From Asterias rubens (taxonomy: Eukaryota): a DNA stretch of 64,000 bases. Positions 1 through 19,928 of the stretch are shown in pieces. Position 1 is the stretch's first letter. Every line of letters starts with the position of its first letter. A program made the translations under genes and the position numbers. The stretch lies in the NCBI RefSeq assembly GCF_902459465.1, contig NC_047081.1, forward strand, positions 11,284,001-11,348,000. Direction: 5' to 3'. The notes under the pieces were generated by a model. The model did no database searches. It saw only the letters and a list, made by a program, of their open reading frames with translations, and was not told the origin of the DNA.

Positions 1-3000
1 AGAGGTTGGTGCCGGACACCTGGCCTGCTTGGGGGTTGGTGTACGCGGTGAAGTCAAACTGAATGATCTGGTTGTTGACGCCCTCGCGGAGGGTTCGGAG
101 GTTACCCCCAAAATCCACCCGGGTGATTTCAAGACCTGGAAAAAAGTTTAATCAAATTGAAATGTTTTTAGCGGCCATCCTCTTTTTACATTCAAAATTT
201 ATAAAACTAAAACACATTCAAAAAGAGGGAATATAGTAAATTATTGATTCTAACCATTCTTTAGGGTGTCTACAAAAAAGTGAATAAAAATGGTTGCCCA
301 ACACGCCATGTACAAAATGTACAAACCAAGAAATGCTGAGAGCAAGGGATCAAACTCACCTCTGCACTGGACTGAGGTACATCCAACCAGAGAGGGACTT
401 CCCTGAACCCCACGGATCGAGAAGGGTGTAGAGGGGCTCTGACCACGCCCGATCACGCCGCAGACGGATGCCACCTGCGTACAGGACAAGGAGTTGGTGT
501 TCAGCGTAGACTGTAAGGTGAAGATGGTGGAGGCTGCTGGTGGGCGCCATTGAACGCTGCCCTGCTGACTGTTAAGATTGACATTCTGGAAGAGAGAAAA
601 CAAAAATAGGTTATGAATAAAGAGCATATTTTGGGTTACTTCTTAGGTTAATTTAGCGCTTGTGTACTTTTGAGCAAGACACTTCGCCAGAGTTGCTTTG
701 TTAAAATGGTGCAAAGATATCATTTTATTTGATACTCCTCTTTCAGGGCAAAATTTGAATTATGACATCATCAGACAGCAAAGAAGAAATTCTTCGCCTG
801 TTATAAGCCCAAATACAATGCCATTTCAATTGAATATCACTAGAACTCAGGAACGAACTGAGAATTAAAAAAATTCTTTGAGCAATAATGCATAGACCAT
901 AACTTTTGGATGTTGACAAGAATTGCACTTTATTTTTGAGTATCACTTGAGTATCAAAGTGGTCTTTTAAACCATTTTAATGTGAGGTTAAAATCCAACA
1001 CCCCCCCCCCTCCCCATGATGTCATATGGACCCCCATCTATTGGAAAATGAGTGGATCAAAAAACTAAATTTGACCTGGGAACCCCTCTTGAAACCCCTT
1101 GTTTTTGCTGCAATTCAACAGAAGAAAACAAGTGACGATTTCATCTCTTTGAAAACAATGAATGGTTTAAAACCAAAACATTCTCTTTACCTGTGTTGCG
1201 ACTTGATTTCCTAAATTATTCCTCAAGAGCAACGTGACGCTCCACAGACCAGTTCCCGTGAGGAGGAACTGGGTTTGACCCGGTGAGAAGGTCAGGTCAA
1301 AGGTGAAGCTCTGACTGAGACGACCCTGAATAACAGGAATACCGGAGCTCACACTGATGGCGGTCTGTGAAACGATTACGGTGCCTAGAGAGAAAAAGAA
1401 GGAGTGTTACCAGACCGTAAATATAGCATGCCTGTTTCCACTAACTACAATCATTTGTAGTGTATTTAAAGTGAGGCTGGTGGGAAAATAAGTCTGGTGC
1501 CATATATTAATATGTAAGCTTTCAGGTAAAAGCTTCAATGATCAACCTTATTTTATTTTTTTCCCCTGCATTTTTTAAAGGGTTGACATTAGTTTTTTGT
1601 TTCTTTTTCAGACAGTTCTTTTAAATGATTTATCTCACCAGTGAAAAATTACAAATATACCCAGTGAATGCAAAGCTGATCACTATGGTCGAAGGACAAC
1701 ACTTTTTTTATATTTTGTTATAAAACAACAACACTGTAAATAAATCATCCATTTAATAACGAGGGTAAATGCCTACCTATTTCACAGTTGACTCCGCTGA
1801 AGTCTAGGAGACAGGTGCACTGGTACCCATTGGTCCCAGTGCTGCCGATTCTATTACAAAAACCCCCATTTTGACATGGATTAACCCAACAAGGATCAGG
1901 ATCTAAAGTTTTAGTAAAAAAAACAAAAAAACATGGAGTTTAATTATAGGCGCACAGGTGACCCATTCAATAGTGCCAATCACTAGTATCATTTGTCAAA
2001 TAATCTTGAGGCACAATTCAGGACCAATTCCATTTCACGGGCCGAAGCCATGTTAAATGAAAAAGATCCAGATTTTATCGAGTGAGTAAAATGCATAAAT
2101 TATTAACTGTTTTTATTATAACACATAGATCTTTAAAATTTGATTTTTGTTTTTCACAATGAAGTTATAAACTAAAAATATACACTGAAGCGTGTCGTTC
2201 TTGTTAGTGTTACTCTCATTACAATACATACAATATGGTAACAAATGTGAAACCAGAGGTGAAACATCACATTTTTAATGAATATTTAAAACACTTTTAA
2301 AAAAGAGACGTTGTGCAAAGCACTGTGACTAGGCAGAAATGCATACTATCTGAATTGTGTTCACTGTAAATATACAGTGTAACACACTCGCACTACATAA
2401 TAAGGTTTATCGAGATTCAGAACCGCAGTGCTTTGTGGGAAGGCATATGGGGCAGTTTGCTATGCGATGTATGTTGTCGTGCACGACTCGCGCCAGATCG
2501 CCTATATCTTTGTGGAAATTGTGCGGGTTCAACAGCCCCCTCTTTTGATATTTTGCTATTGGCGATAAACCTTATGAGCTCAGGAAGAACCAGTGCGTCC
2601 CCAATCATGCCTATAATTTTGGGCTGGGTCTCATTAATATCAATTTTGAAAGAATGAAAAAAAATACAGAACTTTTGCCCCCACCAAAGCTTTAGCCCAG
2701 TAATAATAATATTGTCGGCCTCCAACAATTTATGGGTCTACCCTTATCACTGATAATATCAGTTAACCATGTTTACAAGAATGTTGAGCGGGAGGATAAC
2801 ATTTAAATTGATTTCAAGGGTTGCATAGTTATTATCATAACTGGGGCAGGGGATTTTACACACTGAGTGCACACAAGTGCCGTCATCTTCATCAAACGGA
2901 AACATTGTTTTTAGAGAAAGTATTTGTTGGTGACTTACCGGCTTCATATCTGATTGAAAAGCCTCCACTTGGAACATTGAAGTCTGTATACCAGTACAAC

Positions 3001-5315
3001 ACTACCTGGTTAGTGTTGAATGTTTGTGGAGCGATTTGGTCAGTTCCAATATACGTCCTAAAAAGCACAAGAAAATACAAATGTGTCAAGTTTTAGCAGC
3101 CGACATCCAGCAAAAAAAAACTAATGTTCAATAACAGCGCCCTCTGTTGACCTCTGTCAACAGAAATCGTTCCTCTGTCTGTCTGCTCTGGCCTATGTCA
3201 CTCTGTTTAGTTTGAAGCACAGTCACATAATTATTTTTTGTCGGCAATTATTATTAATTTGAGTGCAAAATAATCAATTATGCTCTCTTGACAGCAGACA
3301 ATGAGTGTAGTCTTTTTAGCAGGTTGTGTGTTTTGTCATCTTCATACAAAATATAAAATGGAAAGCTTATTTTCCCCCAATATTAAATATTGTTTTGTTT
3401 TGTTCTGCTTTTGTTAAGATCATCTTCCCATCAAGGAACTCGGCAGAAACTCCAGGGGAATATAAACACCAAGATGGTAACAGCCAATCCCTCTCATACA
3501 ACAAAGTTTATGATCATGTACGTCTATAATTATGAGTTGCACACAAGATAGGGATTCATTCTACTGCGGCAAAACTTATTGTAGTCATTGTACAATCAAA
3601 AGGTTAGCTAGGTGAGGATTCGAACCCACAACCATTACAAGTCCTGCACCAATGGACATACAACAGAAGTGCGTTTTGGCGACCCCAACCAGAAACTTTG
3701 GTCATCGGTTGAGCGTTTTCGCGTGTTCGGTTGAGCGCGGTGACGATGCTGTTCAGACCAACCGACTTGCTGAGTTGGTTGGCTTGGTGGCTTTGGTTGG
3801 GGTCGCCAAAACGAACCCCTGGTGTCATTTAAATTTTAGCATGTCCTGTTATCACGACCTTCGTGATCTTGAGTTTGTCAACTTGCTTGCTCACCGTAGA
3901 TCTGATGATTGATCATTCACTGTGGTGCCAGGATAGATGATCAACCCATCTTTATGATTCTCAGAAAGGAAGACGTCAAAGAAAAAAGTAATCGACTCGG
4001 CCGAAGGTATCCGAACGATGTAGAAACAGTCTTCGTTGTCATTCGGCGGCAGTGGGAAGTTTGTCGTGGTAATGACGCCAGAGTCACTGTAGAAATTACT
4101 GCCACACTCTTTAGCTGTATAAATAATTGTATTTTTATAATAAAAAAATTGAAGAGGTATTTTAACGCTGATTATCTCATAACAAACTAAACATTAACTT
4201 TGTTTTATTTGTTCCCTATATAGCTCTGTCAATGACGTAGTTTGACATATCGACAAGAGTTCATTTGATTGGGAACTCCGCCGCTAATTCGTCATGTCGT
4301 AACACTCGTCGTGAACAATCATTTTGAAAGAAAATTTATAAAAAGACAGTGTCAGAAAGGTGTTTAAGACTGGGATTTCAACTCAGAAACTGTCTTGAGT
4401 TTGTTCCCAAATTGTTGGGTAATATTGACACAGAATATGGGTGTCACTGAACCGAGTCATTGTGTTTTTATTTTGTCGTAGTAGAGTAAAAATATTTTGC
4501 TATTTTTATTATTGAACATTTTGGATGTTATTAATTACAGAGTGAAAATAATTTGCTAGATTGAACATTTTGAATGTAATAAAAAGTAAGTAATTTGCTA
4601 GATTGAACATTTTAAATATTTTAGTTTAAGGAAAAGGAGAAAGATGTCCTACGAATTGACGGTGACAATCCCGGGAGTCTCTGCTCGCAGTTCTGTCCTT
4701 GCCAGCTTCCTTGGCACTCGCATATGTACCCCGGGTTGAGATAAGCCGGACGACATATCGCACCGTTCAGACATAGCTGTTGTGACTGCTGGCAAGCTAT
4801 TCAAAACAATAACAACAGTGGGAATCAAAGGTGTTAAAACAAAACATAACGCTGATTGTTGTTCTTTATACACGTGACAATACCTACACCAATATTGTGC
4901 CATTTTTAACAACGGTTTTTTATCACAATTAAGAATAAATCAATCAAGATATTGTTATTATTATTTCAGAAATAGAAAAGATATTTTGATTATAATCCTG
5001 AGATAATCCATCTTGGAAAGTTGACATCCAAGAAGTCGACATCGTTAGATAAAGTATAATGTGAACGTTTTTACTGTAGGATGTCGTCATCTTGATAAAT
5101 CATCTCAGAATGTTGCCATCTTACGTTTATGACGTCATCATCGTACAGTATTATCTCAGAATCTCAAAAGAAAAATAGATGGCACTTGAACCTTTTCCCA
5201 AACAGATTGATAAAGTTGTCTTACGATTATTTTGAGCTTGTGAGGTACTCGTTGTGGCAAGAAGGATTCCAAGAAGCAGCCAAGAAAGCTGTTTGCGTAG
5301 TGGTCTCGTAGACAT
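1..5315 (-). CDS. Secreted EGF-CUB mosaic protein with repeated unnamed 4-Cys module; 3' end lies beyond the window's left edge (copy 1)
   Basis: Hand-spliced GT-AG exons with consistent phases. 5225-5315: ATG + signal peptide MSTRPLRKQLSWLLLGILLATTSTSQAQNN. 4653-4796: EGF, CQQSQQLCLNGAICRPAYLNPGYICECQGSWQGQNCE (missed by the ORF track). 3895-4114 + 2939-3057: CUB, KECGSNFYSDSGVITTTNFP..EDCFYIVRIP..TYIGT..YTDFNVPSGGFSIRYEA. 1191-1384 + 360-585: module 1. 1-135: start of module 2. An acceptor at 5340-5341 upstream of the ATG implies an unlocated 5'UTR exon. Confidence 0.88.
3672..3813. mobile_element. Small MITE-like inverted-repeat element in the CUB intron (second copy 13213-13358)
   Basis: Perfect 20-bp terminal inverted repeat cgttttggcgaccccaacca (3672-3691) / tggttggggtcgccaaaacg (3794-3813). 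No clear TSD. Confidence 0.65.
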
Positions 5316-6814
5316 GCTGGTGAGTAAGACACCGTCTACCTGTAAGGGGGGGGGGGGGGCAAGAGGGAGTGGGTACACTCATTAAGAAGTTGTATTTTGA
5401 ACACTGTTGTAATGGACAATCGGGTTGGCTAACATTACGTTTTGGGTAACCATATAATTAATGGCAATAAAAACATACTTTGTTACACAGCAGCTTTCGA
5501 TCTGTAAAGCATTTGAGAATCATTTCACTTTGAAGTAATGTAGATTGGAAAAATGGAAAAATATCAGTTTTTATTCCCCAAACATTTCTCAGATTGTGTA
5601 TTCCAGTATGGATTAGTGTTCTTAAAGTGGAAAATAACCGCCCGGAATTTTCGGCGATATCGCAAAAACGCTTTGAAATACAATTGTCACGGGTGTTATA
5701 GGATTCAAACAATACAACAATTTTAAAACCTTAAGGTACAATATTTGCCAGTTTGCCTAAGTGCCACATCTGCAAATCCCACTTTGGACCGAAGACTTGC
5801 GTGTGGATTGGGTTTTCAGTCCTGGTCACCAGAAACAAAAAGAAAATTCTACTAAAAGTAAAAATTCTTTCAGCGAAAACCGGGCCACGCGAATTTAAAA
5901 AAATTGCGCCAAGATCTGTTCGTAGTCGTGTCTAAAGTCGTTTCCACGAAGATTATTCTAAGCCAAACAAAATAAATTCCACACACTTTTTCAATTTTAA
6001 AGACAACGGACATTGACTTAAATAAAACAAAATGAGCTGCATGGTTGAAATTCTATTTTATGGTTCTGTTTAGAATATTTGTTTTAAACCGTGGACGGTT
6101 TGTGGTTTCCAAAGGCGACAGCGAAAGACTAGTCTAGAATGTCCAGTGTTAGACCTTGACTCTACCTAAGTATAGAAACGTTCATCTCCGGCTATAATAC
6201 GTTCAACAAATCTATCTGGGCTATCTAAACTTAAACACCCATCCTCAATCACACAAACAAAGCAAGGTGGACGCAAGGCCATGCTAGACAATGGAGTTAT
6301 TATTAGAGATGAATATGAAACCCATCCATGGGAAAATTTGTCACAAAAGAGAGATGTTGAGATTGGGGGAGTTGTTTTGTAAAGTTGGATCTTCTGTTGC
6401 CCTTGGAGATGATAATTTTGATTGTGTTTTATGCGGGGATGGATTGAGATAGGTACTGGAAAGCACTGTTTTTGAGTTTGGTGTTTTTCTTTGTTGTTTT
6501 TATTTGTTTGGTAATGTGATGTAAGTGTTACTCATTATGACGGACATGCTACAACTCTTTAGAGGAAATGAAATAAGTTTTTCTTTGAAAACAGTCAGCA
6601 CTGAATCATCACAAGGTTGAAATACTGTATATGGGGAAGAAACGTGGAAAAATGGTGTTTTAGTAAATATTGTTTGACCATTGACGTATGGTGCTGCCTC
6701 GAGACATTGTGTTTTGCTTTGTTTGGGGAAAATAATAAATAACAGAACGTATGGTCAAGCGTCACATGTTTACAGTGCGAATAAAAGTGGGTAATTAGGA
6801 CAGACTCTTTGGTC

Positions 6815-7105
6815 AGCTATTTTTAATAGAGCTTCATCGACTTTAAGTTGGTGTAGCCATATTACTTTTCCCAGGCAAACCAATGTAACCAAACCGAGGC
6901 TGGGAGTAAAATAGTCTGGTCCCGTTGTGGTGTATTTGGTGTATGGTTGATATTGCCTTAATGAACCTTGAGACACGATAAAGTTTGTGCATGGCATGAC
7001 CAATATTATTGGCAAGCTATTTTTAGTAGAAATTTATCCGTCATGCCCAGGCAAACCAATTTAAACAAACCGAGACTGTAAGTAAAAATAGTCTGGTGCC
7101 GTTCG
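6815..7105. repeat. Degenerate direct repeat, two units ~200 bp apart
   Basis: agctattttt..cccaggcaaaccaat.taa.caaaccgag.ctg..agtaaaa.tagtctggt.ccgtt occurs at ~6815-6925 and again at ~7015-7105. Confidence 0.7.
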
Positions 7106-8834
7106 AAACTAATTCAAGTAAAAAATCATAAGTGACACCTGGGTATAAACAATTACAAAGAAATTAAACAAATTTTGTAAGAACATGTGTAACTCATTGT
7201 TGTGCGCAGTGAAATTGTGACTCCCAAAACAGACAAAATGATTATACGTTTGTACAAGAAGGGTTAACTTTATATCCCCTGAAGAAAAGTGTGACTCTCG
7301 TATTAGTGTGACGTTGTACAAGGGGTTAACTTTTAAATCCACCAAAAGGACCAACAAATCCTTTTTTGAATGGTTTAAACCTGACCAGTAGGGAATGCAA
7401 GGCATTCGGTCTGTCGACCAACCCATGTTTGCTTTAAAAGCAAATCTACTTTTCGCACCCACTGAAGCGTGGTCTCGATGAAAGGAACTGGGACGTACGT
7501 TTGTTGGAAATAAACACAAGCTACATTCCACTAGGCATTGAATTCAAAGCAAACTTGTCTGATTCAGTGAGTACTCAGTCTGAGTTGCTACTTTGAAGTC
7601 TCATTACTCTAATGGGTATAGACCCCGACTGTCACATTGTATACTCTGCCATGTTTGTCGTGTTCCAAGTGTTCGTAAGCAATACTGGAACCTGTATTTC
7701 TATTGAACATGAAAGGGTTCAGACTAATAATTTGTCGTCAAAACCTCGATGTGTTTTCAATGATGTTATAATTTATGACGTAATTGGTATTACATGTATT
7801 TGAACATTATAATCGGGTAAAACCGAGTATGTTTTCGGAGACTTAAAAACTGGTATAGGAAAACTAAAAACTGTGATCAGGCACCCCATCATAATCGGAG
7901 TCCAACAGTTTGTGAGTGTTGGGTTTATGTCCAGCAAGGAAAACTTTATGTATCCTGCCACTCCCACTTTTCACCCATTTTTACCAAAAGGAACATCTCA
8001 TTGGAGTAGTTTAGAGACAGAATATTTCAGTTTATTTTATAACGAATGGAAAAGTAGTGGCAGGATACAGACACTTTCCCTAGTCCAGCAAACTCATTCT
8101 GGATATTTCTATTTAATATACATATCATTTTGGAACTTACATGAATGTGGATAAATACAACAAAATTAATATGTGAACATTTTATTTCGAAAGGTGGTAG
8201 TGTTTTTGAGATAATATTGCCGAAAATCTGGAGCGGTTATGTTCTAATTCGTAATAATTATGATACACACAATTTGAGAAACCTCCCTGACTGAGAATTG
8301 TTTCTCAAAAATAAACTTGTATTTTTTTTCATAACCACATTATTGAAGTAAAACGATTCTAAATATGCATTGACGAGCAGAGTGTACAGTTCGAAACGTC
8401 GAGACCCAACCGGCTCTTTTCAGAGCTAACACTCACCCTAAGAGATTTACACATGGTTGTACTCGCAAGTTGACTATTTATTTGTATTTTCTTCTAACTA
8501 CGTGTGTTTTTATTGGTATTAATTTGAAGAAAGATTTCCAAACACAATATATAACTTCCCTATAAAAATACAAGTGTTCTTGAAATCATACTCCCCATCG
8601 CCATTCAAAAGCTAGGGTGAATAAAGGTCAACTCTGTGGAAAAATTCCACCTTCAAAATATAGTGAATAACAATAATCCAGTGTTCACAAAAAGGAACAA
8701 CACGTCAAAAGAAAGTACGACGAGTGATGAATGGCTTCTGTTGTATATCCACAAAAGTGGAAAAATAGACTTGACTTATGCATCTGTCAGTATTTAAGAG
8801 GCCTATGTCTGCATGGCCAGGTGATGGGCCAAAT

Positions 8835-9192
8835 CTCACGGACACCTTTGATAATTAATTGTCAAAGATCCAAGTATTCTTACTTCATTAAGTAATCGGT
8901 GAAAATTTTGACTCAATTGGTCATCGAAGTTGCAAGAGAATCATGAAAGAAAATTCACCCTTGTTGCACAAAATTGTATGTGATTTCAGATGCCTAAAAA
9001 AGGCTTCAGGCTTGAAGTATTTTAATATTGAGCGAGAAATTACCTCTTTCTTAGAAAAGTACGTTACTCTGAGGGAGCCGTTTCCAAAAATGTTGTATAG
9101 GCCTACTATCAACAGCTCTCCATTGCTTGTTACCAAGTAAGTTCGTATGCTCACAAATTTTGAATAGTTAACAGTAGTGTCCAGTGTCTTTA
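8835..9192 (-). mobile_element. Diverged copy of the TTAA-flanked (Kolobok/T2-like) MITE family seen intact at 63065-63450 (second copy ~18375-18740)
   Basis: Shares ggacac..tt.gtaatt / tagtgtccagtgtcttta ends and internal segments (gagggagccgttt, caattggtcatcgaagttgc) with the 63 kb element, in reverse orientation. Confidence 0.75.
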
Positions 9193-10039
9193 GCACAACT
9201 AAGGACATCATAATTACGCTTAGAACAAAAGATTTGTGTGTTTTTTGCCCTCGTCCGATTGACCGTGATTAATTTGTGTTGCGATCGATTTGTCCCCCAC
9301 CCACCCCAACAACAAAAGAGTAAATTCCAAAATACAATCTACAAAACTACAATGTTTTTTTAATATTTTGTATTATTCATCATGTCAACTTGTGTACAAT
9401 AATGTTGAAGCCTGCGTAAGACCAGTAGCTGTAGCTCATTGCACCTGTTTGAGCTACCCGTAGTTAACACGTAACACCAGAAGCATAATAATAGGTGCCT
9501 GCATTATAACCGGGTTAAAATAAAGCCGAACACAGCAACCTGTATTACGCAGAAAATACACATTGCGCAAAACCTGCTTGACGCAACATTGAAAGGGTTA
9601 TGTTTTCCCATGAGTTGTTGTCACAGTTTGGTAAATGTGTCATACAAAGTGAGTAATGAAGAACATATAAAGGGATTTCGTTTCTGGGGTGTTTTTCGAG
9701 CAGTTTGCTTTCAAGATTAAGGACAAATTCAGCAATGACATTCGTTTTACTCGTCATACAACAATGCACACCGGTTTTACTTTCATGTTAAAAACAATCA
9801 TTTGATGTATATTCTCTTAACTCTTGGTTCTATATGGGCAGAAGCAATGGAATCGACTTGCCAACATCAGTGTTGGTTTTATTGATTCAATCATTGGTTT
9901 TAGTTGAAAAAGCCTAAGCAAAGCGGTAAGCCCAGAGTTAAAATTTCGAAACGTGTTGAGTTTTGAGTCGGCCAATTATGCAAATTCTGGTGTTGGGGCG
10001 TTGGATGTGTTACTTTAATTTTAAAATAAAAGCCACCAG

Positions 10040-10172
10040 CAGTCCTGATACTTCAAGGAGGCAACCATGCCCCTTGGTGCCCTTGAAATGCTCCAGTAGA
10101 AATTTCCTCATAGGGTGCCCTTTACCAAGGAGAACATGCCTTGGCGCCCTTGCCCTTTCAAGAAGAACTCAC
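10040..10172. repeat. Interspersed repeat family (ggtgcccttgaaatg..catagggtgccctttaccaaggaga)
   Basis: Homologous sequence at ~19600-19725 (duplicate copy) and ~63845-63947; fragments at ~30965-31010 and ~38270-38320. Confidence 0.7.
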
Positions 10173-10348
10173 AATTAGTTTAATTTTGAGGCCCACAGCT
10201 TAAAAAGTGAAGAAACTAAACAGGCATTTCAATAAAACCCCATTGTTCATTTTAGGTTAAATGGTTGGGATCAACCGTCCACCGTTATGGTCCAACAATG
10301 TTCCATGAAGGGATTTCTAAGTCAACTATTTTCTGAGTCACCAACAGT

Positions 10349-10848
10349 NNNNNNNNNNNNNNNNNNNNNNNNNNNNNNNNNNNNNNNNNNNNNNNNNNNN
10401 NNNNNNNNNNNNNNNNNNNNNNNNNNNNNNNNNNNNNNNNNNNNNNNNNNNNNNNNNNNNNNNNNNNNNNNNNNNNNNNNNNNNNNNNNNNNNNNNNNNN
10501 NNNNNNNNNNNNNNNNNNNNNNNNNNNNNNNNNNNNNNNNNNNNNNNNNNNNNNNNNNNNNNNNNNNNNNNNNNNNNNNNNNNNNNNNNNNNNNNNNNNN
10601 NNNNNNNNNNNNNNNNNNNNNNNNNNNNNNNNNNNNNNNNNNNNNNNNNNNNNNNNNNNNNNNNNNNNNNNNNNNNNNNNNNNNNNNNNNNNNNNNNNNN
10701 NNNNNNNNNNNNNNNNNNNNNNNNNNNNNNNNNNNNNNNNNNNNNNNNNNNNNNNNNNNNNNNNNNNNNNNNNNNNNNNNNNNNNNNNNNNNNNNNNNNN
10801 NNNNNNNNNNNNNNNNNNNNNNNNNNNNNNNNNNNNNNNNNNNNNNNN
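10349..10848. other. Scaffold gap (500 N)
   Basis: Exactly 500 consecutive N, a round number typical of an arbitrary gap size. Confidence 1.
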
Positions 10849-13800
10849 TGAAGCTCTGACTGAGACGACCCTGAATAACAGGAATACCGGAGCTCACACT
10901 GATGGCGGTCTGTGAAACGATTACGGTGCCTAGAGAGAAAAAGAAGGAGTGTTACCAGACCGTAAATATAGCATGCCTGTTTCCACTAACTACAATCATT
11001 TGTAGTGTATTTAAAGTGAGGCTGGTGGGAAAATAAGTCTGGTGCCATATATTAATATGTAAGCTTTCAGGTAAAAGCTTCAATGATCAACCTTATTTTA
11101 TTTTTTTCCCCTGCATTTTTTAAAGGGTGACATTAGTTTTTTGTTTCTTTTTCAGACAGTTCTTTTAAATGATTTATCTCACCAGTGAAAAATTACAAAT
11201 ATACCCAGTGAATGCAAAGCTGATCACTATGGTCGAAGGACAACACTTTTTTTATATTTTGTTATAAAACAACAACACTGTAAATAAATCATCCATTTAA
11301 TAACGAGGGTAAATGCCTACCTATTTCACAGTTGACTCCGCTGAAGTCTAGGAGACAGGTGCACTGGTACCCATTGGTCCCAGTGCTGCCGATTCTATTA
11401 CAAAAACCCCCATTTTGACATGGATTAACCCAACAAGGATCAGGATCTAAAGTTTTAGTAAAAAAAACAAAAAAACATGGAGTTTAATTATAGGCGCACA
11501 GGTGACCCATTCAATAGTGCCAATCACTAGTATCATTTGTCAAATAATCTTGAGGCACAATTCAGGACCAATTCCATTTCACGAGCCGAAGCCATGTTAA
11601 ATGAAAAAGATCCAGATTTTATCGAGTGAGTAAAATGCATAAATTATTAACTGTTTTTATTATAACACATAGATCTTTAAAATTTGATTTTGTTTTTCAC
11701 AATGAAGTTATAAACTAAAAATATACACTGAAGCGTGTCGTTCTTGTTAGTGTTACTCTCATTACAATACATACAATATGGTAACAAATGTGAAACCAGA
11801 GGTGAAACATCACATTTTTAATGAATATTTAAAACACTTTTAAAAAAGAGACGTTGTGCAAAGCACTGTGACTAGGCAGAAATGCATACTATCTGAATTG
11901 TGTTCACTGTAAATATACAGTGTAACACACTCGCACTACATAATAAGGTTTATCAAGATTCAGAACCGCAGTGCTTTGTGGGAAGGCATATGGGGCAGTT
12001 TGCTATGCGATGTATGTTGTCGTGCACGACTCGCGCCAGATCGCCTATATCTTTGTGGAAATTGTGCGGGTTCAACAGCCCCCTCTTTTGATATTTTGCT
12101 ATTGGCGATAAACCTTATGAGCTCAGGAAGAACCAGTGCGTCCCCAATCATGCCTATAATTTTGGGCTGGGTCTCATTAATATCAATTTTGAAAGAATGA
12201 AAAAAAATACAGAACTTTTGCCCCCACCAAAGCTTTAGCCCAGTAATAATATATTGTCGGCCTCCAACAATTTATGGGTCTACCCTTATCACTGATAATA
12301 TCAGTTAACCATGTTTACAAGAATGTTGAGCGGGAGGATAACATTTAAATTGATTTCAAGGTTGCATAGTTATTATCATAACTGGGGCAGGGGATTTTAC
12401 ACACTGAGTGCACACAAGTGCCGTCATCTTCATCAAACGGAAACATTGTTTTTAGAGAAAGTATTTGTTGGTGACTTACCGGCTTCATATCTGATTGAAA
12501 AGCCTCCACTTGGAACATTGAAGTCTGTATACCAGTACAACACTACCTGGTTAGTGTTGAATGTTTGTGGAGCGATTTGGTCAGTTCCAATATACGTCCT
12601 AAAAAGCACAAGAAAATACAAATGTGTCAAGTTTTAGCAGCCGACATCCAGCAAAAAAAAACTAATGTTCAATAACAGCGCCCTCTGTTGACCTCTGTCA
12701 ACAGAAATCGTTCCTCTGTCTGTCTGCTCTGGCCTATGTCACTCTGTTTAGTTTGAAGCACAGTCACATAATTATTTTTTGTCGGCAATTATTATTAATT
12801 TGAGTGCAAAATAATCAATTATGCTCTCTTGACAGCAGACAATGAGTGTAGTCTTTTTAGCAGGTTGTGTGTTTTGTCATCTTCATACAAAATATAAAAT
12901 GGAAAGCTTATTTTCCCCCAATATTAAATATTGTTTTGTTTTGTTCTGCTTTTGTTAAGATCATCTTCCCATCAAGGAACTCGGCAGAAACTCCAGGGGA
13001 ATATAAACACCAAGATGGTAACAGCCAATCCCTCTCATACAACAAAGTTTATGATCATGTACGTCTATAATTATGAGTTGCACACAAGATAGGGATTCAT
13101 TCTACTGCGGCAAAACTTATTGTAGTCATTGTACAATCAAAAGGTTAGCTAGGTGAGGATTCGAACCCACAACCATTACAAGTCCTGCACCAATGGACAT
13201 ACAACAGAAGTGCGTTTTGGCGACCCCAACCAGAAACTTTGGTCATCGGTTGAGCGTTTTCGCGTGTTCGGTTGAGCGCGGTGACGATGCTGTTCAGACC
13301 AACCGACTTGCTGAGTTGGTTGGGCTTTGGTTGGGCTTTGGTTGGGGTCGCCAAAACGAACCCCTGGTGTCATTTAAATTTTAGCATGTCCTGTTATCAC
13401 GACCTTCGTGATCTTGAGTTTGTCAACTTGCTTGCTCACCGTAGATCTGATGATTGATCATTCACTGTGGTGCCAGGATAGATGATCAACCCATCTTTAT
13501 GATTCTCAGAAAGGAAGACGTCAAAGAAAAAAGTAATCGACTCGGCCGAAGGTATCCGAACGATGTAGAAACAGTCTTCGTTGTCATTCGGCGGCAGTGG
13601 GAAGTTTGTCGTGGTAATGACGCCAGAGTCACTGTAGAAATTACTGCCACACTCTTTAGCTGTATAAATAATTGTATTTTTATAATAAAAAAATTGAAGA
13701 GGTATTTTAACGCTGATTATCTCATAACAAACTAAACATTAACTTTGTTTTATTTGTTCCCTATATAGCTCTGTCAATGACGTAGTTTGACATATCGACA

Positions 13801-14858
13801 AGAGTTCATTTGATTGGGAACTCCGCCGCTAATTCGTCATGTCGTAACACTCGTCGTGAACAATCATTTTGAAAGAAAATTTATAAAAAGACAGTGTCAG
13901 AAAGGTGTTTAAGACTGGGATTTCAACTCAGAAACTGTCTTGAGTTTGTTCCCAAATTGTTGGGTAATATTGACACAGAATATGGGTGTCACTGAACCGA
14001 GTCATTGTGTTTTTATTTTGTCGTAGTAGAGTAAAAATATTTTGCTATTTTTATTATTGAACATTTTGGATGTTATTAATTACAGAGTGAAAATAATTTG
14101 CTAGATTGAACATTTTGAATGTAATAAAAAGTAAGTAATTTGCTAGATTGAACATTTTAAATATTTTAGTTTAAGGAAAAGGAGAAAGATGTCCTACGAA
14201 TTGACGGTGACAATCCCGGGAGTCTCTGCTCGCAGTTCTGTCCTTGCCAGCTTCCTTGGCACTCGCATATGTACCCCGGGTTGAGATAAGCCGGACGACA
14301 TATCGCACCGTTCAGACATAGCTGTTGTGACTGCTGGCAAGCTATTCAAAACAATAACAACAGTGGGAATCAAAGGTGTTAAAACAAAACATAACGCTGA
14401 TTGTTGTTCTTTATACACGTGACAATACCTACACCAATATTGTGCCATTTTTAACAACGGTTTTTTATCACAATTAAGAATAAATCAATCAAGATATTGT
14501 TATTATTATTTCAGAAATAGAAAAGATATTTTGATTATAATCCTGAGATAATCCATCTTGGAAAGTTGACATCCAAGAAGTCGACATCGTTAGATAAAGT
14601 AATGTGAACGTTTTTACTGTAGGATGTCGTCATCTTGATAAATCATCTCAGAATGTTGCCATCTTACGTTTATGACGTCATCATCGTACAGTATTATCTC
14701 AGAATCTCAAAAGAAAAATAGATGGCACTTGAACCTTTTCCCAAACAGATTGATAAAGTTGTCTTACGATTATTTTGAGCTTGTGAGGTACTCGTTGTGG
14801 CAAGAAGGATTCCAAGAAGCAGCCAAGAAAGCTGTTTGCGTAGTTGTCTCGTAGACAT
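10849..14858 (-). CDS. Second copy of the EGF-CUB mosaic gene, truncated at the gap (likely alternate haplotype)
   Basis: Exons 14768-14858 (signal peptide, MSTRQLRK vs MSTRPLRK in copy 1), 14198-14341 (EGF), 13440-13659 and 12480-12598 (CUB), 10849-10929 (partial module-1 exon cut by the gap). Confidence 0.75.
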
Positions 14859-17800
14859 GCTGGTGAGTAAGACACCGTCTACCTGTAAGGGGGGGGGGGG
14901 GGGCAAGAGGGAGTGGGTACATTCATTAAGAAGTTGTATTTTGAACACTGTTGTAATGGACAATCGGGTTGGCTAAAATTACGTTTTGGGTAACCATATA
15001 ATTAATGGCAATAAAAACATACTTTGTTACACAGCATCTTTCGATCTGTAAAGCATTTTGAGAATCATTTCCTTTTGAAGTAATGTAGATTGGAAAAATG
15101 GAAAAAATATCAGTTTTTATTCCCCAAACATTTCTCAGATTGTGTATTCCAGTATGGATTAATGTTCTTAAAGTGGAAAATAACCGCCCGGAATTTTCGG
15201 CGATATCGCAAAAACGCTTTGAAATGCAATTGTCACGGGTGTTATAGAATTCAAACAATACAACAATTTTAAAACCTTAAGGTACAATATTTGCCAGTTT
15301 GCCTAAGTGCCACATCTGCAAATCCCACTTTGGACCGAAGACTTGCGTGTGGATTGGGTTTTCAGTCCTGGTCACCAGAAACAAAAAGAGAATTCTACTA
15401 AAAGTAAAAATTCTTTCAGCGAAAACCGGGCCACGCGAATTTAAAAAAAATGCGCCAAGATCTGTTCGTAGTCGTGTCTAAAGTCGTTTCCACGAAGATT
15501 ATTCTAAACCAAACAAAATAAATTCCACACACTTTTTCAATTTTAAAGACAACGGACATTGACTTAAATAAAACAAAATGAGCTGCATGGTTTAAATTCT
15601 ATTTTATGGTTCTGTTTAGAATGTTTGTTTTAAACCGTGGACGGTTTGTGGTTTCCAAAGGCGACAGCGAAAGACTAGTCTAGAATGTCCAGTGTTAGAC
15701 CTTGACTCTACCTAAGTATAGAAACGTTCATCTCCGGCTATAATACGTTCAACAAATCTATCTGGGCTATCTAAACTTAAATACCCATCCTCAATCACAC
15801 AAACAAAGCAAGGTGGACGCAAGGCCATGCTAGACAATGGAGTTATTATTAGAGATGAATATGAAACCCATCCATGGGAAAATTTGTCACAAAAGAGAGA
15901 TGTTGAGATTGGGGGAGTTGTTTTGTAAAGTTGGATCTTCTGTTGCCCTTGGAGATGATAATTTTGATTGTGTTTTATGCGGGGATGGATTGAGATAGGT
16001 ACTGGAAAGCACTGTTTTTGAGTTTGATGTTTTTCTTTGTTGTTTTTATTTGTTTGGTAATGTGATGTAAGTGTTACTCATTATGACGGACATGCTACAA
16101 CTCTTTAGAGGAAATGAAATAAGTTTTTCTTTGAAAACGTCAGCACTGAATCATCACAAGGTTGAAATACTGTATATGGGGAAGAAACGTGGAAAAATGG
16201 TGTTTTAGTAAATATTGTTTGACCATTGACGTATGGTGCTGCCTCGAGACATTGTGTTTTGCTTTGTTTGGGGAAAATAATAAATAACAGAACGTATGGT
16301 CAACGTCACATGTTTACAGTGCGAATAAAAGTGGGTAATTAGGACAGACTCTTTGGTCAGCTATTTTTAATAGAGCTTCATCGACTTTAAGTTGGTGTAG
16401 CCATATTACTTTTCCCAGGCAAACCAATGTAACCAAACCGAGGCTGGGAGTAAAATAGTCTGGTCCCGTTGTGGTGTATTTGGTGTATGGTTGATATTGC
16501 CTTAATGAACCTTGAGACACGATAAAGTTTGTGCATGGCATGACCAATATTATTGGCAAGCTATTTTTAGTAGAAATTTATCCGTCATGCCCAGGCAAAC
16601 CAATTTAACCAAACCGAGACTGTAAGTAAAAATAGTCTGGTGCCGTTCGAAACTAATTCAAGTAAAAAATCATAAGTGAAACCAGGGTATAAACAATTAC
16701 AAAGAAATTAAACAAATTTTGTAAGAACATGTGTACCTCATTGTTGTGCGCAGTGAAATTGTGACTCCCAAAACAGACAAAATGATTATACGTTTGTACA
16801 AGAAGGGTTAACTTTATATCCCCTGAAGAAAGGTTTGACTCTCGTATTAGTGTGACGTTGTACAAGGGGTTAACTTTCTAAATCCACCAAAAGGACCAAC
16901 AAATCCTTTTTTGAATGGTTTAAACCTGAACAGTAGGGAATGCAAGGCATTCGGTCTGTCGACCAACCCATGTTTGCTTTAAAAGCAAATCTACTTTTCG
17001 CACCCACTGAAGCGTGGTCTCGATGAAAGGAACTGGGACGTACGTTTGTTGGAAATAAACACAAGCTACATTCCACTAGGCATTGAATTCAAAGCAAACT
17101 TGTCTGATTCAGTGAGTACTCAGTCTGAGTTGCTACTTTGAAGTCTCATTACTCTAATGGGTATAGACCCCGACTGTCACATTGTATACTCTGCCATGTT
17201 TGTCGTGTTCCAAGTGTTCGTAAGCAATACTGGAACCTGTATTTCTATTGAACATGAAAGGGTTCAGACTAATAATTTGTCGTCAAAACCTCGATGTGTT
17301 TTCAATGATGTTATAATTTATGACGTAATTGGTATTACATGTAATTGAACATTATAATGGGTAAAACCGAGTATGTTTTCGGAGACTTACAAACTGGTAT
17401 AGGAAAACTAAAAACTGTGATCAGGCACCCCATCATAATCGGAGTCCAACAGTTTGTGAGTGTTGGGTTTATGTCCAGCAAGGAAAACTTTATGTATCCT
17501 GCCACTCCCACTTTTCACCCATTTTTACCAAAAGGAACATCTCATTGGAGTAGTTTAGAGACAGAATATTTCAATTTATTTTATAACGAATGGAAAAGTA
17601 GTGGCAGGATACAGACACTTTCCCTAGTCCAGCAAACTCATTCTAGATATTTCTATTTAAGTATACATATCATTTTGGAACTTACATGAATGTGGATAAA
17701 TACAACAAAATTAATATATGAACATTTTATTTCGAAAGGTGGTAGTAAGTGTTTTTGAGATAATATTGCCGAAAATCTGGAGCGGTTATGTTCTAATTCG

Positions 17801-19928
17801 TAATATGATACACACAATTTGAGAAACCTCCCTGACTGAGAATTGTTTCTCAAAAATAAACTTGTATTTTTTTTCAAAACCACATTATTGAAGTCAAACG
17901 ATTCTAAATATGCATTGACGAGCAGAGTGTACAGTTCGAAACGTCGAGACCCAACCGGCTCTTTTCAGAGCCAACACTCACCCTAAGAGATTTACACATG
18001 GTTGTACTCGCAAGTTGACTATTTATTTGTATTTTCTTCTAACTACGTGTGTTTTTATTGGTATTAATTTGAAGAAAGATTTCCAAACACAATATATAAC
18101 TTCCCTATAAAAATACAAGTGTTCTTGAAATCATACTCCCCATCGCCATTCAAAAGCTAGGGTGAATAAAGGTCAACTCTGTGGAAAAATTCCACCTTCA
18201 AAATATAGTGAATAACAATAATCCAGTGTTCACAAAAAGGAACAACACGTCAAAAGAAAGTACGACGAGTGATGAATGGCTTCTGTTGTATATCCACAAA
18301 AGTGAAAAATAGACTTGACTTATGCATCTGTCATTTTTAAGAGGCCTATGTCTGCATGGCCAGTGATGGGCCAAATCTCACGGACACCTTTGATAATTAA
18401 TTGTCAAAGATCCAAGTATTCTTACTTCATTAAGTAGCAAATCGGTGAAAATTTTGGCTCAATTGGTCATCGAAGTTGCAAGAGAATCATGAAAGAAAAT
18501 TCACCCTTGTTGCACAAAATTGTATGTGATTTCAGATGCCTAAAAAAGGCTTCAGGCTTGAAGTCTTTTAATATTTGAGCGAGAAATTACCTCTTTCTTA
18601 GAAAAGTACGTTACTCTGAGGGAGCCGTTTCCAAAAATGTTGTATATAGGCCTACTATCAACAGCTCTCCATTGCTTGTTACCAAGTAAGTTCGTATGCT
18701 CACAAATTTTGAATAGTTAACAGTAGTGTCCAGTGTCTTTAGCACAACTAAGGACATCATAATTACGCTTAGAACAAAAGATTTGTGTGTTTTTTGCCCT
18801 CGTCCGATTGACCGTGATTAATTTGTGTTGCGATCGATTTGTCCCCCACCCACCCCAACAACAAAAGAGTAAATTCCAAAATACAATCTACAAAACTACA
18901 ATGTTTTTTTAATATTTTTTATTATTCATCATGTCAACTTGTGTACAATAATGTTGAAGCCTGCGTAAGACCAGTAGCTGTAGCTCATTGCACCTGTTTG
19001 AGCTACCCGTAGTTAACAAGTAACACCAGAAGCATAATAATAGGTGCCTGCATTATAACCGGGTTAAAATAAAGCCGAACACAGCAACCTGTATTACGCA
19101 GAAAATACACATTGCGCAAACCTGCTTGACGCAACATTGAAAGGGTTATGTTTTCCCATGAGTTGTTGTCACAGTTTGGTAAATGTGTCATACAAAGTGA
19201 GTAATGAAGAACAATATAAAGGGATTTCGTTTCTGGGGTGTTTTTCGAGCAGTTTGCTTTCAAGATTAAGGACAAATTCAGCAATGACATTCGTTTTACT
19301 CGTCATACAACAATGCACACCGGTTTTACTTTCATGTTAAAAACAATCATTTGATGTATATTCTCTTAACTCTTGGTTCTATATGGGCAGAAGCAATGGA
19401 ATCGACTTGCCAACAATCAGTGTTGGTTTTATTGATTCAATCATTGGTTTTAGTTGAAAAAGCCTAAGCAAAGCGGTAAGCCCAGAGTTAAAATTTCGAA
19501 ACGTGTTGAGTTTTGAGTCGGCCAATTATGCAAATTCTGGTGTTGGGGCGTTGGATGTGTTACTTTAATTTTAAAATAAAAGCCACCAGCAGTCCTGATA
19601 CTTCAAGGAGGCAACCATGCCCTTTGGTGCCCTTGAAATGCTCCAGTAGAAATTTCCTCATAGGGTGCCCTTTACCAAGGAGAACATGCATTGGCGCCCT
19701 TGCCCTTTCAAGAAGAACTCACAATTAGTTTAACTTTGAGTAATTGGCCATTCGTCTTCAGAATTTTGAGGCCCACAGCTTAAAAAGTGAAGAAACTAAA
19801 CAGGCATTTCAATAAAACCCCATTGTTCATTTTAGGTTAAATGGTTGGGATCAACCGTCCACCGTTATGGTCCAACAATGTTCCATGAAGGGATTTCTAA
19901 GTCAACTATTTTCTGAGTCACCAACAGT
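10849..19928. repeat. Copy B of ~9 kb near-identical segment (starts exactly at the gap edge)
   Basis: Colinear with 1304-10348; begins mid-exon at the first base after the Ns. Confidence 0.97.

What the first reader, a model, noticed from the sequence alone, without database searches (positions are those of the whole stretch)
1..1384. Unnamed ~140-aa, 4-cysteine extracellular module repeated in tandem behind EGF-CUB
Seen: exons 1191-1384 and 360-585 encode GTVIVSQTAISVSSGIPVIQGRLSQSFTFDLTFSPGQTQFLLTGTGLWSVTLLLRNN..LSCTQVASVCGVIGRG..FSIRG..LVGCTSVQCRG. Exon 1-135 starts a second copy that aligns without gaps over 27 residues (G..Q..FD.T..GT.L: GRLSQSFTFDLTFSPGQTQFLLTGTGL vs GVNNQIIQFDFTAYTNPQAGQVSGTNL). 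The module is bounded by phase-1 introns with an internal phase-0 intron. Established: phase 1-1 boundaries mark shuffled extracellular modules such as EGF and CUB. Inference: a beta-rich, disulfide-bonded mobile domain that I cannot assign to a named family. From memory it may relate to echinoderm egg-coat/ECM proteins such as the ARIS proteins, but that is unverified.
Basis: partly seen in the sequence, partly recalled or inferred. Interest (0 to 1): 0.8.

Follow-up and report, generated by a model that had tools for sequence, protein, structure and literature searches.

The report
Starfish fibrosurfin-like gene with SURF modules
The "unnamed" 140-residue four-cysteine repeat is real and transcribed, but it is the SURF module already described in sea-urchin fibrillar collagens and fibrosurfin, found here in a starfish relative of fibrosurfin.

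Summary
Observation confirmed. The minus-strand exons 1384-1191, 585-360 and 135-1 have canonical splice sites. The predicted next codon is Trp, and six more modules follow to the left of the window.

The module is not new. A profile built from 31 starfish copies hits the named Paracentrotus lividus fibrosurfin (Q9GNU3) as 13 tandem domains, each at E 1e-16 to 1e-35. It also fills the space between the VWC domain and the triple helix of an Acanthaster fibrillar collagen. That is where the literature places SURF (sea urchin fibrillar) four-cysteine modules.

The gene reads signal peptide-EGF-CUB-EGF-4 SURF-2 EGF-3 SURF, followed by about 36 EGF exons. Its first SURF module groups with the first module of fibrosurfin. 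I file it as a fibrosurfin-family matrix protein of Asterias rubens.

Three points go somewhat beyond the papers I could read:
- SURF has no Pfam model and no solved structure.
- AlphaFold gives a confident (pLDDT 94.7) Ig-like beta-sandwich.
- The module has at least 100 copies in this genome. It also occurs in hemichordate receptor phosphatases, a sea-urchin adhesion GPCR and perlecan-like proteins. All 30 sampled relatives are Ambulacraria.

No link to ARIS was found, but ARIS sequences could not be fetched.

The parts
5225..5315 (-). Exon 1: start codon at 5315 and signal peptide (MSTRPLRKQLSWLLLGILLATTSTSQAQ..), donor GT, phase 1
   Evidence: The start codon and the signal peptide are inferred from the sequence. 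This exon was not inside the stretch laid with reads.
4653..4796 (-). Exon 2: first EGF domain, phase 1-1
   Evidence: Pfam EGF E 1.1e-4; AG/GT borders
3895..4114 (-). Exon 3: CUB domain, first part (profile positions 1-64)
   Evidence: Pfam CUB E 7.7e-7. Aligns to fibrosurfin residues 94-137, E 1e-5 pairwise.
2939..3057 (-). Exon 4: CUB domain, second part (profile positions 75-110)
   Evidence: Pfam CUB E 0.08 alone. Its 3' end is the loose end of the spliced contigs.
1777..1902 (-). Exon 5: second EGF domain, phase 1-1
   Evidence: Pfam EGF E 4.4e-6; contig piece and joint to 1384
1191..1384 (-). SURF module 1, exon a (phase 1 in, phase 0 out)
   Evidence: the spliced module matches the SURF profile at i-E 7.4e-19
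360..585 (-). SURF module 1, exon b, carrying all four cysteines (phase 0 in, phase 1 out)
1..135 (-). Start of SURF module 2. The exon runs on to window -287 (G000:C21:11283713) as one 423-nt phase 1-1 exon.
   Evidence: profile i-E 2.9e-43 (member of the training set); AlphaFold model pLDDT 94.7
10849..19928 (.). Near-identical second copy (99.1%) of window 1304-10348, directly after the 500-N gap. It duplicates exons 1-5 and the first 81 nt of SURF1 exon a. Probably an uncollapsed haplotype at an assembly gap.

Best explanation
The stretch encodes the first one and a third SURF (sea urchin fibrillar) modules of a large secreted matrix protein of the fibrosurfin family in Asterias rubens. 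The gene on the minus strand reads: signal peptide, EGF, CUB, EGF, four SURF modules, two EGF, three SURF modules. About 36 EGF exons and two LDL-receptor class A repeats follow on the same strand. Each SURF module is about 140 residues with four conserved cysteines. It is predicted to be a seven-stranded Ig-like beta-sandwich, and phase-1 introns bound it, so it can be shuffled like EGF and CUB. By analogy with sea urchin, where SURF arrays sit on the surface of collagen fibrils (5-alpha N-propeptide) or between fibrils (fibrosurfin, cleaved 2-alpha N-propeptide), the tandem array most likely forms a stiff beaded rod. This rod would lie between collagen fibrils of echinoderm connective tissue and mediate or space fibril-to-fibril contacts. 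Shown here: the exons, their splicing, the family membership of the module, the domain order, and the predicted fold. Inferred: secretion, tissue location, the binding role, and whether the EGF/LDLa exons beyond SURF7 all belong to one transcript.
For: Splicing and frame: (three studies). Seven modules in the gene. Family: a profile of 31 starfish modules hits named fibrosurfin Q9GNU3 (found) as 13 tandem domains at residues 264-2095, each E 8e-16 to 2e-35. The same profile fills residues 127-1146 of an Acanthaster fibrillar collagen, between VWC (72-123) and the triple helix (from 1174). This is the position that PMC2852846 gives for SURF modules. PMC10817530 names SURF in the 2-alpha and 5-alpha N-propeptides and in fibrosurfin. 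Same N-terminal layout as fibrosurfin: EGF, a CUB-sized segment, EGF, then SURF, and the CUB exon aligns to fibrosurfin 94-137. Window SURF1 groups with the first modules of fibrosurfin and of two other urchin SURF-EGF proteins (SH-aLRT 96). The nearest rows of the other four window modules tested were mostly urchin fibrosurfin-type modules rather than the chromosome-3 arrays or collagen modules. Fold: pLDDT 94.7, pTM 0.87, seven strands. The best structural matches are uncharacterised proteins with TM up to 0.83; by their accession series (my recollection, the tool hides the organism) they are sea-cucumber and sea-urchin entries.
Against: The module count and order differ from urchin fibrosurfin: 7 modules interrupted by two EGFs, against 13 uninterrupted. 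Pfam sees no CUB in fibrosurfin itself. The C-terminus could not be matched to the urchin long form, which ends in a transmembrane helix. One-to-one orthology is therefore not shown. Only the first module has a supported position in the tree, and most forks are unresolved. The original SURF papers (1992, 1995, 2001, 2004) were not held, so the definition comes from two reviews plus the named UniProt entry. No localisation or function data exist for the starfish protein, and fibrosurfin's own function is stated as unknown (PMC10817530). The runs laid are contigs labelled 'RNA?' by guess.
Confidence: 0.88

Rival explanations
1. A truly new, unnamed extracellular domain family.
For: No Pfam match for any module at E up to 10. 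No PDB relative by sequence and none by Foldseek at E <= 0.001. All 30 sampled database relatives carry 'uncharacterized' or misleading automatic names.
Against: The module has been described and named in the literature as SURF. The named fibrosurfin entry is hit 13 times at E down to 2e-35, and the collagen N-propeptide position agrees with PMC2852846.
Confidence: 0.04
2. The module is the conserved domain of the starfish egg-jelly ARIS proteins, so the gene has a role in fertilisation.
For: A paper on 'novel conserved structural domains' of ARIS exists (Naruse 2011, cited in PMC9759900) but could not be read.
Against: No ARIS-named protein appeared among homologues of an Asterias amurensis SURF protein or among the 30 named relatives sampled. 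All sampled relatives are Ambulacraria, whereas the title of the ARIS paper says its domains are widespread in invertebrates. The window modules sit nearest fibrosurfin modules.
Confidence: 0.05
3. The modules are the N-propeptide of a fibrillar collagen gene, like the sea-urchin 2-alpha and 5-alpha chains.
For: SURF arrays occur in that context in Acanthaster and Patiria collagens.
Against: Here the array is preceded by EGF-CUB-EGF rather than VWC. It is followed by EGF exons, with no Gly-X-Y exons and no COLFI domain within 70 kb downstream on that strand. The modules lie nearer fibrosurfin than collagen modules.
Confidence: 0.02
4. Chance open frames or a dead gene copy created by the local duplication.
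For: Window 1304-10348 is duplicated across an assembly gap, and the copy boundary lies inside the SURF1 exon.
Against: Spliced contigs from three studies match the left copy and run on through SURF2 and SURF3 without a frame break. All frames are open and all splice sites canonical.
Confidence: 0.01

Closest known systems
Fibrosurfin of Paracentrotus lividus (UniProt Q9GNU3, 2656 aa; Cluzel et al. 2001)
   Same: Signal peptide, EGF, a CUB-sized segment, EGF, then a tandem SURF array, then an EGF array. The first SURF modules group together.
   Different: 13 uninterrupted SURF modules against 7 here, split 4+3 by two EGFs. Two EGFs precede the array in urchin, one here. Pfam sees a clear CUB here and none in fibrosurfin. 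Two LDLa repeats lie downstream here. The C-terminus here is undetermined.
SURF modules in N-propeptides of sea-urchin fibrillar collagens 2-alpha and 5-alpha (Exposito 1992, 1995; Cluzel 2004; reviewed in PMC2852846)
   Same: Same roughly 140-residue four-cysteine module in tandem arrays. The starfish profile fills the VWC-to-triple-helix interval of Acanthaster collagen.
   Different: The context is an EGF-rich non-collagen protein, with no VWC, no triple helix and no COLFI domain.
Fibropellins and urchin SURF-EGF-avidin proteins (e.g. S. purpuratus LOC575916, Diadema XP_072167954)
   Same: EGF/CUB N-terminus and long EGF arrays. Some urchin members carry 6-9 SURF modules.
   Different: Those end in an avidin-like domain. 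No avidin exon was seen downstream here.
CARDB, TRAP-beta and macroglobulin MG-type Ig-like beta-sandwiches
   Same: Overall seven-stranded sandwich. VIA-align Z is 7.6 (2l0d), 7.0 (TRAP, 8b5l) and 6.2 (CARDB, 3idu). Language-model neighbours are CARDB clusters at 0.85.
   Different: Z under 8 is the level of a common fold only. Sequence identity is about 10%, and Pfam CARDB does not match. This is a resemblance of shape, not membership.

Membership tests
SURF (sea urchin fibrillar) module | About 140-145 residues with four conserved cysteines | tested here: met
   Modules are 137-152 aa. C100 and C107 are invariant, C134 is present in at least 90% of rows, and the fourth Cys lies near the C-terminus. 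Window module 1 has four Cys.
SURF (sea urchin fibrillar) module | Significant sequence similarity to the modules of named fibrosurfin | tested here: met
   The starfish profile hits Q9GNU3 with 13 domains at E 8e-16 to 2e-35. Window module 1 matches the profile at 7e-19 and module 3 at 3e-26.
SURF (sea urchin fibrillar) module | Occurs as a series between VWC and the minor triple helix of some echinoderm fibrillar procollagens | tested here: met
   Acanthaster collagen P0002: VWC 72-123, seven modules 127-1146, collagen from 1174, then COLFI. The definition comes from PMC2852846.
SURF (sea urchin fibrillar) module | Match to the original S. purpuratus / P. lividus 2-alpha and 5-alpha collagen SURF sequences | not tested
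   Those entries were not retrieved, and the original papers are not held.
Fibrosurfin (orthologue) | N-terminal signal peptide-EGF-CUB-like-EGF, followed by a SURF array and an EGF array | tested here: met
   for the window gene; for fibrosurfin.
Fibrosurfin (orthologue) | One-to-one orthology (same module number and order, matching C-terminus) | tested here: inconclusive
   7 against 13 modules. Only module 1 has a supported pairing (SH-aLRT 96). The C-terminus was not matched.
Fibrosurfin (orthologue) | Interfibrillar location in collagenous (catch) tissue | not testable with these tools
   Needs antibody or in situ work. PMC10817530 and PMC11959729 report it for urchin and brittle star.
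ARIS egg-jelly proteins | Sequence similarity to ARIS1-3 conserved domains | not tested
   ARIS sequences and the paper were unavailable. No ARIS-named hit appeared.
Ig-like beta-sandwich fold | Two-sheet sandwich of about seven strands | tested here: met
   AlphaFold model with pLDDT 94.7 and strands at 2-9, 22-32, 45-52, 61-67, 83-93, 105-112 and 132-136. The matches are generic sandwiches. This is a prediction only.

The most novel reading that the evidence does not exclude
SURF is not a sea-urchin collagen oddity. It is an Ambulacraria-wide, promiscuous Ig-like module that arose before echinoderms and hemichordates split. It has been shuffled into collagens, fibrosurfin-type proteins, receptor tyrosine phosphatases, adhesion GPCRs and perlecan-like proteins, and is amplified to more than 100 copies in Asterias. 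It may therefore be a general collagen- or matrix-docking unit, relevant to mutable collagenous tissue.
Probability: 0.55. Interest if true: 0.45.

Novelty: new member of a known kind. Interest (0 to 1): 0.3.

Why it matters
The practical result is a correction: the repeat already has a name and a literature, so it should not be reported as a new domain. Two things remain useful. First, SURF has no model in the Pfam copy searched here and no solved structure, and every relative sampled is annotated 'uncharacterized' or misnamed (collagen-like, adhesin-like, mucin-like). The 31-sequence alignment and the confident Ig-like model would allow a proper family to be defined. Second, SURF-bearing molecules are candidates for the interfibrillar links of echinoderm mutable collagenous tissue, whose molecular basis is still open. 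A starfish fibrosurfin-like gene, more than 100 further modules in Asterias rubens and hemichordate copies in receptors give concrete targets for that question.

Tried and rejected
- Pfam on single exons and whole modules gave nothing at E up to 10, apart from a chance AraC_binding_2 hit at 0.029.
- ESM Atlas by features gave CARDB clusters at 0.82-0.86, below the reliable level; I use this only as a hint of fold.
- Foldseek against PDB gave no match at E <= 0.001. VIA-align wide gave a best Z of 7.6, the level of a common sandwich. Atlas by shape gave TM about 0.5 to bacterial MG2-like models. A PDB sequence search with the profile gave only E 0.47.
- ARIS: literature searches found only reference-list citations or the unrelated Xenopus ARISX. 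The Naruse 2011 paper is not held.
- The original fibrosurfin and collagen papers are not held.
- tblastn of fibrosurfin's N-terminus and of the C-termini of the long urchin models against 92 kb of the locus gave only EGF-to-EGF matches, so the 3' end of the gene stays undefined.
- No full-length model of this gene appeared among the best 150 representatives.
- Cadherin-repeat exons from about window -41700 on the same strand may belong to a neighbouring gene; this was not resolved.
- Earlier scan notes hold no record of SURF or fibrosurfin.

Full report
**Coordinates.** The window is G000:C21:11284001-11348000. The gene lies on the minus strand and runs off the left end of the window. I fetched 70 kb to the left. 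Positions of 0 or below are window coordinates continued leftward, so position x equals C21:11284000+x.

- Reverse-complement reading shows three open exons with AG/GT borders at 1384-1191, 585-360 and 135-1.
- The module borders are phase 1, and the intron inside module 1 is phase 0. Module 3 has the same internal phase-0 intron.
- The exon continues to -287 as one complete 141-residue module.
- Five further modules follow. Modules 3, 4 and 7 are split into two exons; modules 5 and 6 are single exons. Two EGF exons lie between modules 4 and 5.

**Transcript evidence.**
- Logan contigs of three runs from three studies, laid on window -1499..2900, contain single records of 0.9-5.1 kb.
- These records skip exactly the proposed introns. 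Each skipped piece has GT..AG ends on the minus strand.
- The joints give the exon chain 1777-1902 | 1191-1384 | 360-585 | -287..135 | -791..-586 | -1383..-1182.
- The upstream loose end equals the last bases of the CUB exon at 2939. The downstream loose end equals the start of module 4.
- These are contigs, and their RNA label is a guess. Still, intron-free records in three studies are hard to explain otherwise.

**Upstream exons.** They give a start codon at 5315 with a signal peptide (5315-5225), then EGF (4796-4653), CUB in two exons (4114-3895 and 3057-2939) and EGF (1902-1777). This agrees with an earlier first-stage note on the same window.

**What the module is.**
- No Pfam model matches any module.
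- The module has at least 100 six-frame matches in this genome. Most lie in long one-exon-per-module arrays on contig 3, with others on contigs 6, 37, 1, 4 and 5.
- I aligned 31 copies. Conserved features are G..LW, FGS...DG.G.R, two invariant cysteines six residues apart, a KG....PDF motif and two C-terminal cysteines.
- A profile search of 1.84 billion representatives gave 612 proteins at E <= 0.001 and 89 at E <= 1e-30.
- The 30 named relatives I looked up are all Ambulacraria. They cover crinoids, asteroids, ophiuroids, echinoids, a holothurian and three hemichordates. All are 'uncharacterized' or carry automatic misnomers.

**The link to SURF.**
- One relative is an Acanthaster fibrillar collagen. 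Seven modules fill residues 127-1146, between the VWC domain and the triple helix.
[quoted passage not shown] - A search with a sea-urchin relative returned the named entry: Fibrosurfin, Paracentrotus lividus, Q9GNU3, 2656 aa.
- My starfish profile hits it as 13 back-to-back domains at residues 264-2095, each at E 8e-16 to 2e-35.
- The module is therefore the SURF module.

**Which gene this is.**
- Fibrosurfin begins with a signal peptide, an EGF, a roughly 120-residue segment, two EGFs and then the SURF array.
- The window gene has the same order. Its CUB exon aligns to the middle of fibrosurfin's unassigned segment (E 1e-5).
- In a tree of 129 modules, window module 1 falls in a supported group of four (SH-aLRT 96). 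The other three are the first modules of fibrosurfin and of two other urchin SURF-EGF proteins.
- The nearest rows of the other four window modules tested were mostly urchin fibrosurfin-type modules rather than this genome's contig-3 arrays or collagen modules. Most forks are unresolved.
- Downstream on the same strand lie 36 EGF exons, two LDLa repeats and one more EGF, reaching about -37070. Cadherin-repeat exons follow from about -41700.
- The contig lengths imply that transcripts run past module 7 into the EGF array. I did not see this directly, and the 3' end is not defined.
- I conclude that this is a fibrosurfin-family gene. One-to-one orthology is unproven: there are 7 modules here against 13, and the array is split by two EGFs.

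**Fold.**
- AlphaFold2 with the 31-row alignment gives pLDDT 94.7 and pTM 0.87, with seven strands and two short helices.
- The closest AlphaFold DB clusters are uncharacterised proteins (TM up to 0.83, E 1.5e-9). Their accession series suggest sea cucumber and sea urchin, but the tool hides the organism.
- Solved structures give only generic sandwich matches: Foldseek E >= 0.003, and VIA Z at most 7.6 to CARDB-like, TRAP-beta and macroglobulin domains. The PDB has no sequence relative.
- The two close cysteines lie before and within strand 105-112. The third lies in the last strand (132-136) and the fourth just after it.
- The disulfide pairing could not be read, because model coordinates are not exposed.

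**Mechanism.** Tandem Ig-like modules joined head to tail without linkers would give a beaded rod. The published urchin localisations place SURF arrays on or between collagen fibrils. I therefore propose that this protein is secreted into starfish connective tissue, lies between fibrils, and spaces or links them. Only the architecture is shown here; the rest is inference from the urchin data.

**ARIS.** I could not obtain ARIS sequences or the Naruse 2011 paper. No ARIS-named protein turned up among homologues of an Asterias amurensis SURF protein. This is weak negative evidence only.

**Organism.** A hit named Asterias rubens LOC117287918 sits on a contig of 22,888,987 bases, which is the length of this genome's contig 3.

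**Verdict.** The feature is real and expressed. It is a new starfish member of a known module and protein family, not a new domain. Added value is modest: the missing database model, a confident fold prediction, and the wide Ambulacrarian and architectural range.

Noticed in passing
window 1304-10348 versus 10849-19928; gap 10349-10848; also G000:C1:7110186 onward: A 9-kb block holding exons 1-5 and part of the SURF1 exon is repeated at 99.1% identity directly across the 500-N gap. A third copy (99.4% over 1.6 kb) starts at the very same base after another 500-N gap on contig 1. The copy boundary lies inside an exon. This looks like uncollapsed haplotype or misplaced contig ends rather than a real tandem duplication.
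   Followed up: partly
G000:C3:14.96-15.11 Mb, 15.69-15.75 Mb, 16.20-16.22 Mb; C6:0.70-0.74 Mb; C37:33-40 kb: There are at least 100 further SURF-module open frames, mostly one exon per module in long arrays. In the tree, modules of three contig-3 arrays interleave with each other and with Acanthaster collagen modules. This suggests paralogous genes with conserved module order. One of them is A. rubens LOC117287918, a 1514-aa protein; its near-identical A. amurensis counterpart carries six SURF modules, and a VWC domain is listed only in the unthresholded precomputed Pfam column.
   Followed up: partly
proteins P0014, P0011 (Saccoglossus, Ptychodera), P0004 (Glandiceps), P0309 (S. purpuratus): SURF modules occur outside collagen and fibrosurfin. 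Six modules sit ahead of fn3 repeats and a tyrosine-phosphatase domain in hemichordate receptor PTPs. Seven modules sit between VWC and LDLa-Ig-Laminin B in Glandiceps. A sea-urchin protein named adhesion GPCR L4 shares a 90% cluster with profile hit P0127.
   Followed up: partly
window -35102 to -35330 and from about -41700 leftward (C21:11248898-11248670 and below 11242300), minus strand: Two LDL-receptor class A repeats interrupt the EGF array. About 4.5 kb beyond the last EGF exon, a run of cadherin-repeat exons begins on the same strand. Whether they belong to the same gene is unknown.
   Followed up: no
protein P0155 (S. purpuratus LOC589927, 3899 aa) and P0161/P0174 (urchin SURF-EGF-avidin): The genome-predicted long form of urchin fibrosurfin carries 13 SURF modules, 36 EGF domains, a CUB domain, and a hydrophobic stretch that I read as a transmembrane helix followed by a tail. 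This suggests the published 2656-aa fibrosurfin may be one isoform. Other urchin SURF-EGF proteins end in an avidin-like domain, like fibropellins.
   Followed up: no
window -163 and -162 (L001 1337-1338), inside SURF module 2: All three transcript sets read CG where the assembly has TA on the plus strand. This is a two-base difference within the coding exon, presumably an allele.
   Followed up: no
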